A stretch of 63,850 bases of DNA, the filler included, from Octopus bimaculoides (Eukaryota), in assembly GCF_001194135.2 (NCBI RefSeq). It is 6 parts of 6 records of this genome, joined end to end, with 100 filler letters (N's around TTAATTAATTAA, not from the genome) between each part and the next. Parts side by side here need not be neighbours in the genome. Positions count along the whole stretch, not along the records: positions 1 to 9,294 come from NC_069010.1; 5 more parts are not named here. One strand, written 5' to 3'. Under the pieces are notes generated by a model. That model had not been told where the DNA came from and did not search any database. It saw only the letters and a program-made list of their open reading frames with translations. Positions within the stretch are counted from its first letter, which is position 1, and every line of letters begins with the position of its first letter. Made by a program: the position numbers and the translations under genes. Below, one piece after another: positions 1 through 8,991 of the stretch.

Positions 1-345
1 CATGTCAACGAAAGCCAGGTACAGAGGTTTATCCTTAGCTAGGTATTTCTCCTGCAACTGTCTCACTAGAAATAAGGCATCAGTAGTGCTTTTACCTGGC
101 ACGAACCCAAACTGCATCTCATCTAAATTGATTTGCTCCCTAATTAGTTGGGCTATGACCTTCTCCGTAACTTTCATAACCTGATCTAACAGCTTGATGC
201 CTCTGTAATTATTTGCATCTAAAGCGTCACCTTTACCTTTGTAGCAGTTGACTATGATGCTGCTACACCAGTCATTGGGTATGACTCCTTCGTGTATCAC
301 CTGGTTCGTAATACGGGTGACTAGGCTGTAGCCAACACTGCCAGA
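1..345 (-). mobile_element. RTE-clade LINE reverse transcriptase fragment
   Basis: Minus-strand frame reads IPNDWCSSIIVNCYKGKGDALDANNYRGIKLLDQVMK...EMQFGFVPGKSTTDALFLVRQLQEKY...LAFVDM. Confidence 0.9.
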
Positions 346-578: not shown

Positions 579-898
579 AGCACTCTGTCGGTTATGACGA
601 CGAGGGTCCCATCTGATACAATCAACAGAACGGCTTGCTCGTGAGATTAACATGCATGTGGCTGAGTATTCCACCAACACGTGCACCCTTAACGTAGTTC
701 TCAGGGAGATTCACCAAGACACAGAGTGTGACAAGGCTGACCCCTTTGAAATACAGGTACAACTCAATTTTGCCACTGGAGTGGACTGGAGCGACATGAA
801 ATAAAGTGTCTTGCTCAAGGACACAACGCGTCACCTGGAATTGAACTCACGGCCTTACAATCATGAGCCGAATGACCTAACCACTAAGCCATGCGCCT
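577..898 (-). mobile_element. tRNA-derived SINE (family D)
   Basis: tRNA-like head ggcgcatggcttagtggttagg...gagttcaa and body tgtgtccttgagcaagacact; homologous to 21407-21728. Confidence 0.8.
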
Positions 899-970
899 TC
901 ACATACATCCATATATATATATATATATACACACACACATACATATATATATACATACATACATATACAC

Positions 971-1944: not shown

Positions 1945-2218
1945 CTTGCTTCCCAACCACATGGTTCCAGGTTCAGTCTCACTACATGGCACTTTCGGCA
2001 AGTGTCTTCTACTGTAGCCTTGGGCTGACCAAACCCCGTAAATGGATTTGGTAGATGGAAACTGAAAGAAGCCCGTCATATATACAACGGACTTCTTTCA
2101 GTTTCCATCTACCAAATCCACTCCCGAGGCTATAGTAGAAGACACTTGCCCAAGGTACTACACAGTGGGACTGAACCCAGAACCATGTGGTTGGGAAGCA
2201 CACAGCCACTCCTGCACC
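1945..2218. mobile_element. Two family-A SINEs tail-to-tail (inverted repeat)
   Basis: + copy at about 1947-2076 and - copy at 2087-2218, separated by 10 nt. Confidence 0.85.
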
Positions 2219-2237
2219 TATATATATATATATATAG

Positions 2238-2700
2238 TTGAGGGAACCTGTGGAAGAAACAGTTGAGGGAACCCATGGAAGAGGTAGGCCCAGGAAGACC
2301 TGGGCTGAGGTGGTGAGGCAAGACCTTCGAACATTGGGCCTCACCGAGGCAATGACTACTGACCGAGACCTTTGGAAATGTGCTGTGCGTGAGAAGACCC
2401 GGCAAGCCNNNNNNNNNNNNNNGAGCGAGATCGTTGCCAGTGCCCCTGGACTGGGTCTTGTGCGGGTGGCACATAAAAGACACCATTTCGAGCGTGGCCG
2501 TTTTCGTGCGGGTGACACGTAAAAGCACCCACTACACTCTCTGAGTGGTTGGCGTTAGGAAGGGCATCCAGCTGTAGAAACTCTGCCAAATTAGATTGGA
2601 GCCTGGTGTAGCCATCCGGTTTCACCAGTCCTCAGTCAAATCGTCCAACCCATGCTAGCATGGAAAGCGGACGTTAAACAATGATGATGATGATGATGAT
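2238..2700 (+). mobile_element. RTE LINE 3' end with (TGA)n tail
   Basis: VEGTHGRGRPRKTWAEVVRQDLRTLGLTEAMTTDRDLWK C-terminus, then 3'UTR ending in tgatgatgat. Confidence 0.85.
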
Positions 2701-3356
2701 ATATATATATATATTGATCCACTGGCTGATAATTGATGAGGAGTTAGTGACCATCTGTGTCTGTTTCCCATTTGTTCCTGCATTTATTATGTTTTTTTTT
2801 AACTAATTATATATATATGTATATATATATATATTGTGTATGTCTGTATATGTATGCATACATATATGTATAGACTTGCACACACACACACACACATGTA
2901 TTTATGTACAATTTCATCTCGTTTCACTGCACCTGTATATACAACACAAATCCATTGCACACTCACGCATACAACATAACATTTCATATTGTTTTTGCTA
3001 AAAGATATTTTTCCATCAACGCCCACACTTAAGCTCCATTGTACTTCAGTAACGGTCGGTACTCTAATGTCTCTCACTCTCTCTCTCTCGTTTCATACAA
3101 TTAGATTTCCTGTTTCTTGCACAAACAACTCTGCTAGGAAAACGTAACATCAATGTAATCTTGTGGTGTTATTATGTTTGAGATGATAACCGGAGTGAAA
3201 AACAAAAAAATGTCAGAAGGCTTGGTAACTTGAGAAGAATGGAAGAACATGTTGTGTGGCTTTGTTTCTTGTCCTTGAAATTTAATTAAAGGTGTATAGC
3301 AAGGTGTATCTAATGATAAGCAAGTGACATCTTATGCATCACTGTGACATATGTCT

Positions 3357-3556
3357 CTTATCTTTTGCATGTTTCAGTCGTTGGACTGCGGCCATGCTGG
3401 AGCACCACCTTAAAGTGTTTGGGCCGAAGAAATCGACCCCCCCCCCGGACTTATTCTTCATTAGCGCAGTACTTATTCTATTGGTCTCTTTTGCCGAACC
3501 GCTAAGTTACCATGGATGTAAACACACCAACACTGGTAGTCAAGTGGTGATGGGTT

Positions 3557-3736: not shown

Positions 3737-4204
3737 GGTACCTTTTTTACATGTCGCCATCAGTGGTACCTTTTTTACACGTCACCATCAGCGGTGCCTT
3801 TTTTACATGTCGCCATCAGTGGTACCTTTTTTACATGTCACCATCAGTGGTACCTTTTTTACATGTCGCCATCAGTGGTACCTTTTTTACATGTCACCAT
3901 CAGTGGTACCTTTTTTACATGTCACCATCAGTGGTACCTTTTTTACATGTCACCATCAGCGGTACCTTTTTTACATGTCACCATCAGCGGTGCCTTTTTT
4001 ACATGTCGCCATCAGTGGTACCTTTTTTACATGTCACCATCAGTGGTACCTTTTTTACATGTCACCATCAGTGGTACCTTTTTTACATGTCACCATCAGT
4101 GGTGCCTTTTTTACACGTCACCATCAGCGGTGCCTTTTTTACACGTCACCATCACAGGTGCCGTTTTTACACGTCACCATCACAGGTGCCTTTTGCATGT
4201 CACT
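3737..4204. repeat. 28-bp minisatellite (about 16-17 copies)
   Basis: Unit atgtcaccatcagtggtaccttttttac; produces the 28-aa periodic ORFs in all three frames. Confidence 0.95.
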
Positions 4205-4445
4205 GTCCACGGCTACAAACTCATTTGGCCTGACAATTTCTTCTCAAGCACAGCGGATCGCCAAAGGTCTCGATCATTTGTCATCGCTTCTGTGAAACCC
4301 AACATCTGAAGATCATTCTTCACCACCTCGTCCCATGTCTTCCTGGGTCCACTTTCTCCACAGGTTCCCTCTACAATTTGTGATCGGCACCTCTTGACAC
4401 AGCTGTCCTCGTTCACATGCATCACGTGACCATACAAAGCTTCTC
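4205..4445 (-). mobile_element. RTE LINE C-terminal fragment
   Basis: YGHVMHVNEDSCVKRCRSQIVEGTCGESGPRKTWDEVVKNDLQMLGFTEAMTNDRDLWR; same family as 2238-2700. Confidence 0.85.
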
Positions 4446-4497: not shown

Positions 4498-4923
4498 ATG
4501 AGTTTTTCGGGCGGATTGAAACATTTCATACTTCTACAGCAGACAATTGGTAACCAGAAAACAACACTACCTCATCTTTCTCAGAAGATCGACGTCCTCG
4601 CTGGCGAATTATTAACCGGCGATGACCAGATGAATGATGATACTTACCTTCTGTATAATTTGAACCCAGAAAATCCAATTGAATTGCAGTGTGAAGCCAA
4701 CAATGTGAAACTATTGAGTCAGGATGAGTTCCATTTACTTCTACCAATCGCTGCTTGTTCTGAGCGTCTTAAAGTGTTTCGGAATTGGCTCGATGAAGGC
4801 AAGTCATTAAAAATAGGGGACACGGTGACCCTGTATCTGATGAAGCATGAAGTGAATGGAAAGTTGCGGTTTAAAGGGCGCACAGAAGATCAACCAGGCA
4901 CTTTGTTTGGGGTTGAATTAAAT
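4498..4923 (+). CDS. CYLD: CYLD-like deubiquitinase, first coding exon (N-terminus and first half of CAP-Gly 1)
   Basis: Acceptor ttatctttgcag ends at 4492, ATG at 4498, donor AAT|gtaagt at 4924 (phase 0). Translation MSFSGGLKHFILLQQ...LLLPIAACSERLKVFRNWLDEGKSLKIGDTV...GKLRFKG...GTLFGVELN matches, from memory, CYLD motifs FYLLLQE, LLLAITNCEERFSLFKN, GVVRFRG and GIFFGVEL. Confidence 0.88.
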
Positions 4924-5726
4924 GTAAGTTTTTTTTTTTTGTTTTTTTCTTTTTAAGGTTTTATTATGTTCTGTTTTGGTTTGAGTTTTTCATTAATTTT
5001 ATCAGCTGGACAGCGTATATATATATATATNNNNNNNNNNNNNNNNNNNNNNNNNNNNNNNNNNNNNNNNNNNNNNNNNNNNNNNNNNNNNNNNNNNNNN
5101 NNNNNNNNNNNNNNNNNNNNNNNNNNNNNNNNNNNNNNNNNNNNNNNNNNNNNNNNNNNNNNNNNNNNNNNNNNNNNNNNNNNNNNNNNNNNNNNNNNNN
5201 NNNNNNNNNNNNNNNNNNNNNNNNNNNNNNNNNNNNNNNNNNNNNNNNNNNNNNNNNNNNNNNNNNNNNNNNNNNNNNNNNNNNNNNNNNNNNNNNNNNN
5301 NNNNNNNNNNNNNNNNNNNNNNNNNNNNNNNNNNNNNNNNNNNNNNNNNNNNNNNNNNNNNNNNNNNNNNNNNNNNNNNNNNNNNNNNNNNNNNNNNNNN
5401 NNNNNNNNNNNNNNNNNNNNNNNNNNNNNNNNNNNNNNNNNNNNNNNNNNNNNNNNNNNNNNNNNNNNNNNNNNNNNNNNNNNNNNNNNNNNNNNNNNNN
5501 NNNNNNNNNNNNNNNNNNNNNNNNNNNNNNNNNNNNNNNNNNNNNNNNNNNNNNNNNNNNNNNNNNNNNNNNNNNNNNNNNNNNNNNNNNNNNNNNNNNN
5601 NNNNNNNNNNNNNNNNNNNNNNNNNNNNNNNNNNNNAGTCCTCAGTCAAATCGTCCAACCCATGCTAGCATGGAAAGCGGACGTTAAACGATGATGATGA
5701 TGATGATATATATATATATATATATA

Positions 5727-6331
5727 CTCTTACTCTTTTTACTCTTTTACTCTTTTACTTGTTTCAGTCATTTTGACTGTGGCCATGCTGGAGCACCGCC
5801 TTTAGTCGAGTAAATCGACCCCAGGACTTATTCTTTGGATGCCTAGTACTTATTCTATCGGTCTCTTTTTGCCGAACCGCTAAGTTACGGGGACGTAAAC
5901 ACACCACCATCGGTTGTCAAGCGATGTTGGAGGGACAAACACAGACACACATACACAGACATACATACATATATATATAAACTGTAATTTTTGTATAATT
6001 ATTATAATTATTTAGACACTTTAGAGACTGGATACTATAAATTCATTTATTGATTCTTGAAGGAATTGAACACACATATTGTATCTTGCGTTGGACATAT
6101 GGTATTGTTCCTGTGATTTTCCACCCTTATGTATCCTTTTTTACATATATATATATATACATATATACGACAGGCTTCTTTCAGTTTCCGTCTACCAAAT
6201 CCACTCACAAGGCTTTGGTCGGCCCGAGGCTATAGTAGAAGACACTTGCCCAAGGTGCCACGCAATGAGAATGAACCCGGAACCATGTGGTTGGTAAGCA
6301 AGCTACTTACCACACAGCCACTCCTGCGCCT
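5727..6331 (-). mobile_element. Composite A+B SINE (minus) upstream of CYLD exon 2
   Basis: B module at about 5727-5940, microsatellite and about 165-bp insert, A module at about 6168-6331. Confidence 0.8.
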
Positions 6332-6392
6332 ATACGTATACATATCAAACTATGCCTTTCTAATATTTTATTTTATTTCTCTTCCAATGTAG

Positions 6393-6617
6393 TCTCCAAT
6401 AGGCCATAATGACATCAGCAACAGCAACCGATATTTCAACACGGAGCATCCCAACACTGCCATCATTGTGCCCCTCAACAAAATACGGAAATATAACTTG
6501 CCTCTGCAAATCGGAGACCGGGTGGTGTGGATAAGAGACGAAGGAAATGAAAAGGCCACTGTGCGATGGATTGGGAATTTGGACAATAATCCTGAGATCA
6601 CCGTAGGGGTTGAATTT
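6393..6617 (+). CDS. CYLD: CYLD-like coding exon 2 (end of CAP-Gly 1 and first half of CAP-Gly 2)
   Basis: Acceptor tttctcttccaatgtag, 225 nt, phase 0-0, donor TTT|gtaagt. Translation SPIGHNDISNSNRYF...PLQIGDRVVWIRDEGNEKATVRWIGNLDNNPEITVGVEF. Confidence 0.88.
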
Positions 6618-6634
6618 GTAAGTATTCTTCACTA

Positions 6635-7030
6635 TTGCTTGTGGTAAGGAAGCTTGCTTACCAACCACATGGTTCTGGGTTCAGTCCCACTGCGTGACAC
6701 CTTGGGCAAAGTGTCTTCTAATAAAACCTTGTGAGTGGATTTGGTAGACGGAAACTAGAAGAATCCTGTTGTATGTGTGTATGTATGTATGTATGTATGT
6801 ATTTGTTATTTGTGTATGTCCCCCCCACCACCACCACCACCACCATCACTTAACAACCGAAGTTGGTGTGTTAACGTCCACATAACTTAGCGGTTCGGCA
6901 AAAAGAGAACCGATAGAATAAGCACCAGGCTTACAAGCAATAAGTCTTCGGGTCGATTTGTTTGGCTAAAAGCAGTGCTCCAGCATGGCCACAGTCAAAT
7001 GACTGAAATAAGTAAAAGAATAAAAGAAAG
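6635..7030 (+). mobile_element. Composite A+B SINE (plus) downstream of CYLD exon 2
   Basis: A module at about 6635-6772, (GTAT)n, B module at about 6805-7030. Confidence 0.8.
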
Positions 7031-7136
7031 AACATGTGTGTGTGTGTGTGTGTGTGTATGATGGTGGGATGGCTGTGAGGGGTGTCAGCGCAGTTGTGAC
7101 TGAGGCACCCGTGTAGCTGTTTGACTGTAAGGAGTA

Positions 7137-7290
7137 TTGGTGTGGTTGTGAGAAGTTTGCTTCTCAACCATATGATTTCAAGTTCAATTCCACTGCTTTG
7201 CACTTTGGATAAGTGTCTTTTGCTATAGCTTCCATGCTGACCAAAATCTTATCTGTGGACTTGGTAGACAGAAAGTGAAAGAAGTCCATC
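7137..7290 (+). mobile_element. Degenerate family-A SINE
   Basis: gtggttgtgagaagtttgcttctcaaccatatg...ttggtagacagaaagtgaaagaag. Confidence 0.7.
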
Positions 7291-7315
7291 TCTTTCTCTC
7301 TCTATATATATATAT

Positions 7316-7347
<32 letters not shown>

Positions 7348-7779
7348 GAATTTAAGGATTGGAGAAAACGCATGTTATAATTGCATACTTTATTCCTACA
7401 TATGTTTCAAAGGATTACAACCTGTGTGATCCATAGGGATCTTTGATATTAAAATTGTAACCTTCTCATCAGGGAAAGCATGGGAATCANNNNNNNNNNN
7501 NNNNNNNNNNNNNNNNNNNNNNNNNNNNNNNNNNNNNNNNNNNNNNNNNNNNNNNNNNNNNNNNNNNNNNNNNNNNNNNNNNNNNNNNNNNNNNNNNNNN
7601 NNNNNNNNNNNNNNNNNNNNNNNNNNNNNNNNNNNNNNNNNNNNNNNNNNNNNNNNNNNNNNNNNNNNNNNNNNNNNNNNNNNNNNNNNNNNNNNNNNNN
7701 NNNNNNNNNNNNNNNNNNNNNNNNNNNNNNNNNNNNNNNNNNNNNNNNNNNNNNNNNNNNNNNNNNNNNNNNNNNNNNN

Positions 7780-7824: not shown

Positions 7825-8207
7825 GTTGGCACTCCGTCGCTTACGACGTCGAGGGTTCCAGTCGATCCGATCAACGGAACAGCCTGCTCGTGAAATTAAC
7901 ATGCAAGTGGCTGAGCACTCCACAGACACGTGTACCCTTAACGTAGTTCTCGGGGGATATTCAGCGTGACACAGTGTGACAAGGCTGACCCTTTGAATTA
8001 CAGGCACAACAGAAACAGGAAGTAAGAGTGAGAGAAAGTTGTGGTGAAAGAGTACAGCAGGGTTCGCCACCAACCCCTGCCAGAGCCTCGTAGAGCTTTT
8101 AGGTGTTTTCACTCAATAAACACTTACAACGCCCAGTCTGGGAATCGAAACCGCGATCCTATGGCCGCGAGTCCGCTGCCCTAACCATTGGGCCATTGCG
8201 CCTCCAC
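7825..8207 (-). mobile_element. tRNA-derived SINE sharing the family D 3' half but with a different head
   Basis: Head gtggaggcgcaatggcccaatggttagggcagcggactcgcgg...tttcgattccc; 3' half matches 577-780 and 21550-21728. Confidence 0.75.
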
Positions 8208-8394
8208 ACATACATACATACATACATATATATTATCATTATTATTTATAGGATTGTAAATCTCAGTGCCGTATAAAAAAACCATTCACACAGAAAGCAT
8301 ATAGAAGAGTTTGTTTACATAAAAACAAATACAAACTAATCTATAGTTCTTAAATTTGACAGAAATGGGGAGGCTGATTCTGTCTCTCTTTCTC

Positions 8395-8413
8395 TATCTA
8401 TCTATCTCCATCC

Positions 8414-8485
<72 letters not shown>

Positions 8486-8544
8486 GTCTATCTATCTATC
8501 TATCTCTATCTATCTATCTCCATCAATCTATCTATCTATCTATG

Positions 8545-8579
<35 letters not shown>

Positions 8580-8638
8580 GTCTATCTATCTATCTATCTC
8601 TATCTATCTATCTCCATCAATCTATCTATCTATCTATG

Positions 8639-8673
<35 letters not shown>

Positions 8674-8828
8674 GTCTATCTATCTATCTATCTCTATCTA
8701 TCTATCTCCATCAATCTATCTATCTATCTATGTCTATCTATCTATCTATGTCTATCTATCTATCTATCTATCTATCTCTGTCTATCTATCTAGCTCTGTC
8801 TATCTATCTATCTCTGTCTATCTATCTA
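8395..8828. repeat. (TATC)n microsatellite with higher-order structure, abutting the CYLD exon 3 acceptor
   Basis: About 430 bp of TCTA units; the interruption ctccatcaatc recurs about every 95 bp. Confidence 0.95.
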
Positions 8829-8831
8829 CAG

Positions 8832-8991
8832 GACAACCCTTGTGGTACTGGTACAGGGCTGTACAACAAAGAAAGACTATTTAAAACAAAACCAGGCCAT
8901 GCATCACTCCTACCAATGAATGGCCTTCTCAAGGAATCGGTACTTATGGAACAAACTGAAGCACCAAAGCCGTATATTGGTGTATACGATG
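8832..8991 (+). CDS. CYLD: CYLD-like coding exon 3 (second half of CAP-Gly 2)
   Basis: Acceptor ctatctacag, donor G|gtgagt (phase 1). Translation DNPCGTGTGLYNKERLFKTKPGHASLLPMNGLLKES...; it continues GVEF|DNP as in CYLD CAP-Gly 2 (GVDMDNPIG). Confidence 0.85.

What the first reader, a model, noticed from the sequence alone, without database searches (positions are those of the whole stretch)
5727..7030. In-frame CYLD exon 2 tightly bracketed by inverted composite SINEs: candidate circRNA or skipping switch giving a chimeric CAP-Gly
Seen: a minus A+B SINE ends about 60 nt before the acceptor, and a plus A+B SINE starts about 18 nt after the donor, so the two flanking introns are reverse-complementary over about 350 bp. 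Seen: the exon is 225 nt, phase 0-0, and both introns fall at the homologous position just after GVE[L/F] in CAP-Gly 1 and CAP-Gly 2. Inference: skipping fuses ...GTLFGVELN to DNPCGTGTG..., yielding one hybrid CAP-Gly instead of two. Established: inverted repeats flanking an exon promote back-splicing, skipping and ADAR editing.
Basis: partly seen in the sequence, partly recalled or inferred. Interest (0 to 1): 0.72.

Follow-up and report, generated by a model that had tools for sequence, protein, structure and literature searches.

The report
CYLD exon bracketed by inverted repeats
An in-frame 225-base exon of a CYLD-like gene really is flanked by two nested pairs of inverted short repeats that could fold the pre-mRNA into a long hairpin, but this is an expected by-product of a repeat-crowded genome and nothing shows that it acts as a splicing or circular-RNA switch.

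Summary
The anatomy is real. Exon 6393-6617 is 225 nt, phase 0-0, with canonical splice sites. Its flanking introns hold two nested inverted-repeat pairs:
- B arms: 5743-5933 against 6837-7027, 86% over 192 nt.
- A arms: 6142-6318 against 6637-6797, 80% over 179 nt.

In silico the arms form about 360 cross-exon base pairs that loop the exon out.

- A and B are separate repeat families lying tail-to-tail, not one composite SINE.
- The two CAP-Gly introns are one codon apart, so the skipped product carries an extra loop residue.
- The arms match no better than unrelated copies of the same family, so selection for pairing is not indicated.

The CYLD name is supported through a collinear homologue whose USP domain matches human CYLD.

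One inverted pair around an exon is about a 13% event at the local repeat density. The nested double pair is about 0.2%, so many such loci are expected genome-wide.

No transcript data could be reached, so skipping, back-splicing and editing remain untested. Published work found only 296 high-quality circRNAs in octopus and very heavy hyper-editing of inverted repeats. The likeliest reading is an incidental intronic dsRNA that ADAR edits, around a mostly included exon. Interest is low.

The parts
4498..4923 (+). First coding exon. ATG at 4498 with an acceptor-like ttgcag just upstream. It encodes the N-terminus and the first half of CAP-Gly 1, ending ...GVELN|gtaagt.
   Evidence: The N-terminus is collinear with the CYLD homologue P0002.
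5735..5979 (+). B-family interspersed repeat, upstream copy, sense on +. About 205-nt core plus a (CA/CATA)n tail at 5934-5979. This is the outer upstream arm.
5980..6140 (.). Unique AT-rich spacer between upstream B and upstream A. It becomes the large side of an asymmetric internal loop.
6141..6331 (-). A-family SINE-like repeat, upstream copy, sense on -. (TA)n tail at 6141-6167. This is the inner upstream arm and ends 61 nt before the acceptor.
6332..6392 (+). Repeat-free 3' splice-site region with a CTAAT branch-point-like motif, a pyrimidine tract and the AG.
   Evidence: by inspection
6393..6617 (+). Second coding exon, 225 nt, phase 0-0. It encodes the second half of CAP-Gly 1 plus the first half of CAP-Gly 2.
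6636..6820 (+). A-family copy, downstream, sense on +. It is 5'-truncated, has an internal deletion and carries a (TATG)n tail. This is the inner downstream arm and starts 19 nt after the donor.
6821..7030 (-). B-family copy, downstream, sense on -. This is the outer downstream arm, and its tail abuts the tail of the A copy.
7138..7316 (+). A second downstream A copy. It is a weaker alternative partner for the upstream A arm: 75% identity, cofold -183.8 kcal/mol.
8832..8990 (+). Third coding exon, encoding the second half of CAP-Gly 2 (DNPCGTGTG...). Its acceptor is preceded by about 440 nt of (CTAT)n.

Best explanation
SHOWN
- Their order is B-> <-A [exon] A-> <-B.
- The nested inverted arms are there, and the computed cross-exon duplex is strongly favoured.

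INFERRED
- The four repeats inserted independently.
- On each side the two repeats lie tail to tail. One plausible cause is that one element integrated into or near the simple-repeat tail of the other.
- The pre-mRNA can therefore form an imperfect, interrupted duplex of about 360 bp. It closes a loop of about 305 nt holding the exon and both of its splice sites.
- The arrangement is most likely an incidental product of repeat saturation of the introns, not a selected device.
- Its main molecular consequence is probably ADAR binding and A-to-I hyper-editing of the four arms. That editing weakens the duplex.
- The exon is probably spliced in constitutively or nearly so, with skipping or back-splicing at most a minor by-product.
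For: - Arms and distances.
- Duplex energies far below shuffled controls.
- The MFE fold pairs the arms across the exon even with a third A copy present.
- A and B are independent families: 6 and 3 copies in about 7.9 kb, 66-86% identity, 5' truncation and simple-repeat tails.
- The arms match each other no better than unrelated copies do.
- Chance model.
- Splice signals look strong.
- Literature:
  - SINEs make up 11.6% of the O. vulgaris genome (PMC13282606).
  - O. bimaculoides shows the strongest hyper-editing signal of the species surveyed, and hyper-edited dsRNA structures are mostly formed by neighbouring inverted repeats (PMC5625713).
  - Octopus editing lies mostly in introns and 3'UTRs, and circRNA levels are low overall (PMC9699675).
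Against: - No RNA data for this locus could be reached, so inclusion level, editing and back-splicing are all unmeasured.
- The arms lie unusually close to the splice sites (61 and 19 nt). In humans, Alus within about 100 bp of exons are depleted by selection (PMC13019027), and inverted pairs are enriched around skippable exons. A real effect on splicing is therefore plausible.
- N gaps at 5031-5636 and 7490-7779 hide part of both introns, so competing partners cannot be excluded.
- The chance model uses only this window's density and assumes independent placement.
Confidence: 0.62

Rival explanations
1. The inverted repeats act as a regulated loop-out device. It produces a functional CYLD isoform lacking exon 2, with one hybrid CAP-Gly in place of CAP-Gly 1 and 2, and/or a functional exon-2 circRNA. 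ADAR or helicase levels may tune it.
For: - A stable cross-exon duplex sits right next to both splice sites.
- The exon is symmetric and phase 0-0, so there is no frameshift or NMD.
- The skipped product still scores as CAP-Gly, at 43 bits.
- Loop-out skipping by inverted Alus is documented in primates (PMC13019027, PMC2533698).
Against: - There is no transcript evidence.
- The arms are ordinary diverged family copies with no excess complementarity.
- The hybrid has a one-residue insertion (GVEL-N-D-NP) absent from the six natural CAP-Gly domains aligned with it.
- The circle has no in-frame AUG.
- Octopus circRNAs are few (296) and lowly expressed.
- Splice sites look strong.
- The first-stage scan selected this locus from many windows, so a look-elsewhere effect applies.
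Confidence: 0.07
2. The duplex causes appreciable but unregulated splicing noise. That would be more than 10% exon skipping or a readily detectable circRNA, tolerated rather than used.
For: The anatomy is the same as above. In human cells, inverted pairs are statistically enriched around skippable exons.
Against: High ADAR activity in cephalopods is expected to melt such duplexes, and circRNAs are rare there. CAP-Gly 1 and 2 are retained in all nine top homologues scanned, which suggests that loss of the exon is costly.
Confidence: 0.2
3. The long intronic duplex serves as an ADAR-recruiting 'editing inducer' that boosts recoding at sites inside exon 2.
For: In the MFE fold, 46 upstream-intron x exon pairs form next to the long stem. 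Cephalopods recode extensively (PMC9989829).
Against: This is pure inference. No editing data exist for this exon, and the exon-intron pairs in a 1.85-kb MFE fold are unreliable.
Confidence: 0.05
4. Assembly artefact: the inverted arrangement comes from misjoined repeat-rich contigs in a gapped draft assembly.
For: The window carries several N gaps, at 1173-1661, 2409-2422, 5031-5636 and 7490-7779.
Against: All four repeats and the exon lie in one gapless 1,853-nt stretch, 5637-7489. The arms differ by 14-20%, so they are not a collapsed or mirrored copy.
Confidence: 0.02

Closest known systems
Inverted Alu pairs flanking exons (IRAlus): loop-out exon skipping and circRNA biogenesis in primates
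   Same: Both have short interspersed repeats in opposite orientation in the two introns flanking an exon. Both are predicted to form a long imperfect dsRNA stem that loops the exon out. Both have the same expected consequences: skipping, back-splicing and ADAR editing.
   Different: Here the repeat families are different and unrelated, and the host is presumably a cephalopod. Two nested pairs from two families replace one Alu pair. The arms lie far closer to the splice sites (61 and 19 nt). No transcript evidence exists here, whereas primate cases have been validated experimentally (PMC13019027).
Hyper-edited intronic dsRNA formed by neighbouring inverted repeats (Porath et al. 2017, PMC5625713)
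   Same: Both are reverse-complement blocks of about 180-190 nt at 80-86% identity within about 1.3 kb of one pre-mRNA. That study scored putative dsRNA from 65% identity upward and found O. bimaculoides the most hyper-edited species.
   Different: Editing at this locus was not measured. Here the duplex encloses a coding exon rather than lying within a single intron or a 3'UTR.
CYLD (cylindromatosis deubiquitinase; three CAP-Gly domains plus a USP domain)
   Same: The N-terminal region and the two CAP-Gly domains are collinear with homologue P0002 (44% identity over residues 8-261). P0002 has 3 CAP-Gly plus UCH, and its USP domain matches human CYLD 2VHF at 3e-113.
   Different: Only the first three coding exons are in the window, so the third CAP-Gly and the USP domain of this gene were not seen. 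No PDB chain named CYLD appeared among the hits for the window's CAP-Gly domains, even at E up to 10.

Membership tests
Exon flanked by intronic inverted repeats (loop-out / circRNA-type architecture) | Reverse-complementary sequences in the upstream and downstream introns | tested here: met
   Two blocks: 192 nt at 86% and 179 nt at 80%. Cofold is -263 and -249 kcal/mol, against about -96 for shuffles.
Exon flanked by intronic inverted repeats (loop-out / circRNA-type architecture) | Cross-exon pairing is favoured over pairing within one intron | tested here: met
   The MFE fold of 5637-7489 pairs the arms across the exon, with 386 upstream x downstream pairs. No inverted same-family partner is visible inside either intron. 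Caveat: N gaps hide about 600 and 290 nt.
Exon flanked by intronic inverted repeats (loop-out / circRNA-type architecture) | Back-splice junction (6617->6393) or skip junction (4923->8832) observed in RNA | not testable with these tools
   No cephalopod transcript data were reachable. CYLD is not mentioned in the supplements of the octopus circRNA survey that are held as text.
Composite (dimeric) A+B SINE | The parts co-occur in fixed order, orientation and spacing, as one retroposed unit | tested here: not met
   A stands alone in 3-4 of 6 copies and B in 1 of 3. The spacing is 39 against 208 nt. A and B lie in opposite sense, tail to tail.
tRNA-derived SINE (A family) | Short, dispersed, multi-copy, with 5' truncation and a simple-repeat 3' tail | tested here: met
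   Six copies of about 130-175 nt, 66-86% identical, with (TA)n or (TATG)n tails. A_dn is 5'-truncated.
tRNA-derived SINE (A family) | tRNA-like head with pol III A and B boxes | tested here: inconclusive
   By eye, the consensus has TGGCTGTGTGG and GGTTCAGTCCC motifs that resemble box A and box B. ARAGORN and Rfam report no tRNA match.
CYLD deubiquitinase | N-terminal CAP-Gly 1 and 2 collinear with CYLD orthologues | tested here: met
   Pfam finds two CAP-Gly stretches, 92.5 bits in all. Residues 8-261 align to 8-262 of P0002.
CYLD deubiquitinase | Third CAP-Gly and a CYLD-type USP domain in the same gene | not testable with these tools
   These lie outside the window. They are inferred only from homologues.
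ADAR hyper-editing substrate | Long, nearly perfect intramolecular dsRNA | tested here: met
   The identity and length exceed the thresholds used in PMC5625713 and PMC9989829.
ADAR hyper-editing substrate | Clusters of A-to-G mismatches in RNA reads | not testable with these tools
   No RNA-seq access.

The most novel reading that the evidence does not exclude
Lineage-specific SINE insertions created an ADAR-tunable loop-out around CYLD exon 2. When editing is low, octopus cells would make a CYLD isoform whose first two CAP-Gly domains are recombined into one hybrid domain, or an exon-2 circRNA. That would change how the deubiquitinase is targeted to microtubules.
Probability: 0.06. Interest if true: 0.55.

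Novelty: new member of a known kind. Interest (0 to 1): 0.2.

Why it matters
If the loop-out were used, it would be a cephalopod example of transposon-driven isoform innovation. It would remodel paralogous domains by exon skipping, and it would couple the high ADAR activity reported for cephalopods to splicing choice. It would parallel inverted-Alu exon skipping in hominoids.

As things stand, it illustrates how densely SINE-populated introns generate long dsRNA around exons by chance. Its practical value is as a well-defined test locus. Four junctions and four editing arms can be scored in existing octopus RNA-seq data.

Tried and rejected
1. A word-indexed protein search with the 270-aa product found nothing. 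Cephalopod CYLD isoforms could therefore not be inspected for a skipped form.
2. Exact-product look-ups were run for the exon-1 ORF with two different starts and for the exon-2 read-through ORF. The aim was to fetch the locus from other assemblies or species. Nothing was on record.
3. Two metagenome scans with conserved A and B cores, meant to collect more copies and test the composite idea, gave 0 matches.
4. A full-text search for four repeat-core strings in papers gave 0 hits. The families remain unnamed.
5. AlphaFold2 was run without an alignment on the hybrid domain and on the normal two-domain segment. Mean pLDDT was 34.9 and 31.7, so both runs are uninformative and no conclusion is drawn.
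6. Rfam and ARAGORN gave no tRNA or other credible RNA family in the arms. The only hits were sub-threshold miRNA-like matches on microsatellites.
7. The idea that the mirror symmetry reflects selection or gene conversion was rejected, because arm-to-arm identity is typical of the family.
8. The assembly-artefact reading was rejected, because the stretch is gapless and the arms have diverged.
9. The octopus circRNA paper's supplements held as text contain no mention of CYLD.

Full report
**Gene and exon**

Reading the window and translating it gives three coding exons on the + strand:
- 4498-4923. The ATG is at 4498 and is preceded by an acceptor-like ttgcag, so a 5'UTR exon probably lies upstream. 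The exon ends ...GVELN|gtaagt.
- 6393-6617. This exon is 225 nt, 75 codons, phase 0-0, with acceptor ...ttccaatgtag| and donor |gtaagt.
- 8832-8990, which begins DNPCGTGTG.

Pfam finds two CAP-Gly stretches in the joined product, 92.5 bits in all. PDB chains of CLIP-170, CLIPR-59 and TBCB CAP-Gly domains match both.

The CYLD name was not supported directly by PDB. No chain named CYLD appeared among the hits, even at E up to 10. An exhaustive HMMER search of 1.84 billion representatives gave 476 hits:
- The best collinear hit, P0002, is 835 aa and 44% identical over residues 8-261.
- P0002 has three CAP-Gly domains plus a UCH domain.
- Its USP domain matches human CYLD 2VHF at 3e-113, and its third CAP-Gly matches CYLD 1IXD.

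I therefore accept 'CYLD orthologue, second coding exon'. The caveat is that the third CAP-Gly and the USP domain of this gene lie outside the window.

**The inverted repeats**

blastn of the upstream flank against the downstream flank gives two reverse-complement blocks:
- 5743-5933 x 6837-7027: 85.9% over 192 nt, 2 gaps.
- 6142-6318 x 6637-6797: 80.4% over 179 nt, 7 gaps.

The inner upstream copy ends about 61 nt before the acceptor. The inner downstream copy starts about 19 nt after the donor.

RNAcofold gives the following:

| Pair | Cofold energy (kcal/mol) | Gain over the two monomers | Shuffled partners |
|---|---|---|---|
| A arms | -248.5 | -166 | about -96 |
| B arms | -262.7 | -172 | about -96 |

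I folded the whole gapless stretch 5637-7489, which also contains a third A copy. The MFE structure has 386 upstream x downstream pairs:
- 198 pairs in the B arms.
- 33 pairs between the simple-repeat tails.
- 55 + 77 pairs in the A arms.

This encloses a loop of about 305 nt that holds the exon and both of its splice sites. The donor GTAAGT stays unpaired in that fold.

**What the repeats are**

A and B are separate families, not one composite SINE.

Family A has six copies in the window: 965-1135 +, 1946-2071 +, 2077-2200 -, 6160-6331 -, 6637-6774 + and 7141-7289 +.
- Its consensus is about 170 nt, and every copy with a readable 3' end carries a (TA)n or (TATG)n tail.
- The copy just downstream of the exon is 5'-truncated and has an internal deletion. 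That fixes the sense strand as + downstream and - upstream.
- By eye the head has box-A-like and box-B-like motifs. ARAGORN and Rfam give no tRNA hit, so the tRNA origin is only an inference.

Family B has three copies: 3354-3544 +, 5735-5935 + and 6837-7027 -.
- Its core is about 205 nt, and all three copies are followed by a (CA)n-type tail on the same side.
- Its sense strand is therefore + upstream and - downstream.

So each side of the exon carries an A and a B lying tail to tail:
- Downstream they are 39 nt apart, with only simple repeat between them.
- Upstream they are 208 nt apart, including about 150 nt of unique sequence.

A occurs without B in at least three other copies, and B occurs without A once. 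The repeated tail-to-tail layout may reflect integration into simple-repeat tails. That is my inference and was not tested.

**Chance**

A and B alone cover about 20% of the non-N bases of the window. I ran a Poisson model at that density with random orientation.

| Event, within 700 nt on both sides of an exon | Probability |
|---|---|
| At least one inverted same-family pair | 0.13 |
| Nested A and B inverted pairs | 0.002 |
| Nested A and B pairs at one third of the density | 6e-5 |

An animal genome holds exons on the order of 10^5 (my own rough figure). O. vulgaris has about 900 recently active SINE families, and SINEs make up 11.6% of its genome (PMC13282606). Many such loci are therefore expected by chance, and this one was picked by a scan.

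A_up and A_dn are 80% identical, in the middle of the 66-86% range for all A pairs. B_up and B_dn are 86% identical, against 74-77% for pairs that include the third copy. With only three copies, a shared subfamily explains that as well. Nothing indicates selection or conversion that maintains pairing.

**The intron-position claim**

BLASTP and MAFFT align GVELN-SPIGH of CAP-Gly 1 with GVEFD-NPCGT of CAP-Gly 2.
- Intron 1 follows the N.
- Intron 2 precedes the aligned D.
- Both introns are phase 0, but they are one codon apart.

The skipped product GVEL-N-D-NPCG therefore carries one extra residue in a loop. That residue is absent from all six natural CAP-Gly domains aligned with it. Pfam still recognises the hybrid as CAP-Gly at 43 bits.

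AlphaFold2 without an alignment was uninformative for both the hybrid (pLDDT 34.9) and the normal two-domain control (pLDDT 31.7).

A 225-nt circle would be open in the CYLD frame all the way round but has no AUG in that frame. The longest AUG-initiated ORF is 41 aa.

**Function**

No transcript or genome data from cephalopods were reachable. The word-indexed protein search, three exact-product look-ups, two metagenome scans and a literature string search all returned nothing. The functional question therefore rests on anatomy and published work.

Points in favour of an effect on splicing:
- Inverted Alu pairs promote loop-out skipping and are enriched around skippable exons.
- In humans, repeats within about 100 bp of exons are depleted (PMC13019027; PMC2533698). 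The distances here are 61 and 19 nt.

Points against a switch:
- An 18-tissue octopus survey retained only 296 high-quality circRNAs. It reports low circRNA levels, in line with repression by ADAR. It finds no departure from other invertebrates in alternative splicing or back-splicing (PMC9699675).
- CYLD does not appear in that paper's supplements held as text.
- O. bimaculoides shows the strongest hyper-editing signal of the species surveyed. Hyper-edited dsRNA structures are mostly formed by neighbouring inverted repeats (PMC5625713).
- The exon's splice signals look strong.
- CAP-Gly 1 and 2 are kept in all nine top homologues scanned.

**Verdict**

The anatomy is real and well defined. 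It is an ordinary instance of a known kind: an exon inside an intronic inverted-repeat duplex.

| Reading | Confidence |
|---|---|
| Incidental dsRNA that ADAR hyper-edits, with the exon largely constitutive | about 0.6 |
| Appreciable unregulated skipping or circle formation | about 0.2 |
| Editing-inducer role for exon 2 | about 0.05 |
| Assembly artefact | about 0.02 |

The decisive test is simple and uses existing data. Count the four junction types and call A-to-G clusters in the four arms. Then compare the orthologous introns across octopods.

Noticed in passing
window 3737-4200: A 28-nt minisatellite (about 17 copies at 91-96% identity, unit like GGTACCTTTTTTACATGTCACCATCAGT) lies about 300 nt upstream of the ATG-containing exon (family D3).
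   Followed up: no
window 8390-8830: About 440 nt of (CTAT)n microsatellite, with higher-order periodicity, runs to within a few bases of the exon-3 acceptor AG. It effectively forms that exon's pyrimidine-rich tract.
   Followed up: no
window 1946-2200: Two A-family copies lie head-on as a near-contiguous inverted dimer: 1947-2024 x 2123-2200, 85% complementary. This makes a strong local hairpin upstream of the gene, and sub-threshold miRNA-like Rfam hits fall on it.
   Followed up: partly
window 1-345 (- strand); 2245-2408 (+); 4239-4379 (-): These look like LINE remnants. A reverse-transcriptase fragment lies at 1-345 on the minus strand (Pfam RVT_1, E = 4e-6, below gathering). Two inverted copies (76%) of what looks by eye like a LINE ORF 3' end (...GRPRKTWAEVVRQDL...DRDLW...; no Pfam hit) also occur. 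The second copy ends about 120 nt upstream of the CYLD start codon.
   Followed up: partly
window 580-900 and 7825-8205: A third interspersed family (C) is 84% identical over 186 nt. The reverse complement of its right end reads like a tRNA head (GGCGCATGGCTTAGTGGTTAGG...GAGTTCAATTCC), so it would be a tRNA-type SINE lying antisense. No tool called a tRNA there.
   Followed up: no
window 2423-2690 and 5637-5700: An element ending in a (GAT)n tail occurs twice, 98% identical over the 64 nt visible after the N gap. At 2245-2690 it follows the LINE 3' ORF piece, so it is probably a LINE 3'UTR. The upstream CYLD intron therefore also holds a LINE 3' end just before repeat B.
   Followed up: no
homologues P0056, P0099, P0112, P0114, P0122, P0138 and others: Many short predicted proteins from other organisms match only exon 1. 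They break off one residue after G[VI]EL into V-initial junk, the signature of read-through of a GT donor. The CAP-Gly 1 intron therefore seems old and conserved. A few break two residues after GVEL, or directly after it.
   Followed up: partly
protein P0001: The top-scoring library hit is not a CYLD. It has a CYLD-like N-terminus and three CAP-Gly domains, the second CAP-Gly being duplicated almost exactly. A SAM domain and a U-box follow in place of the USP domain.
   Followed up: no
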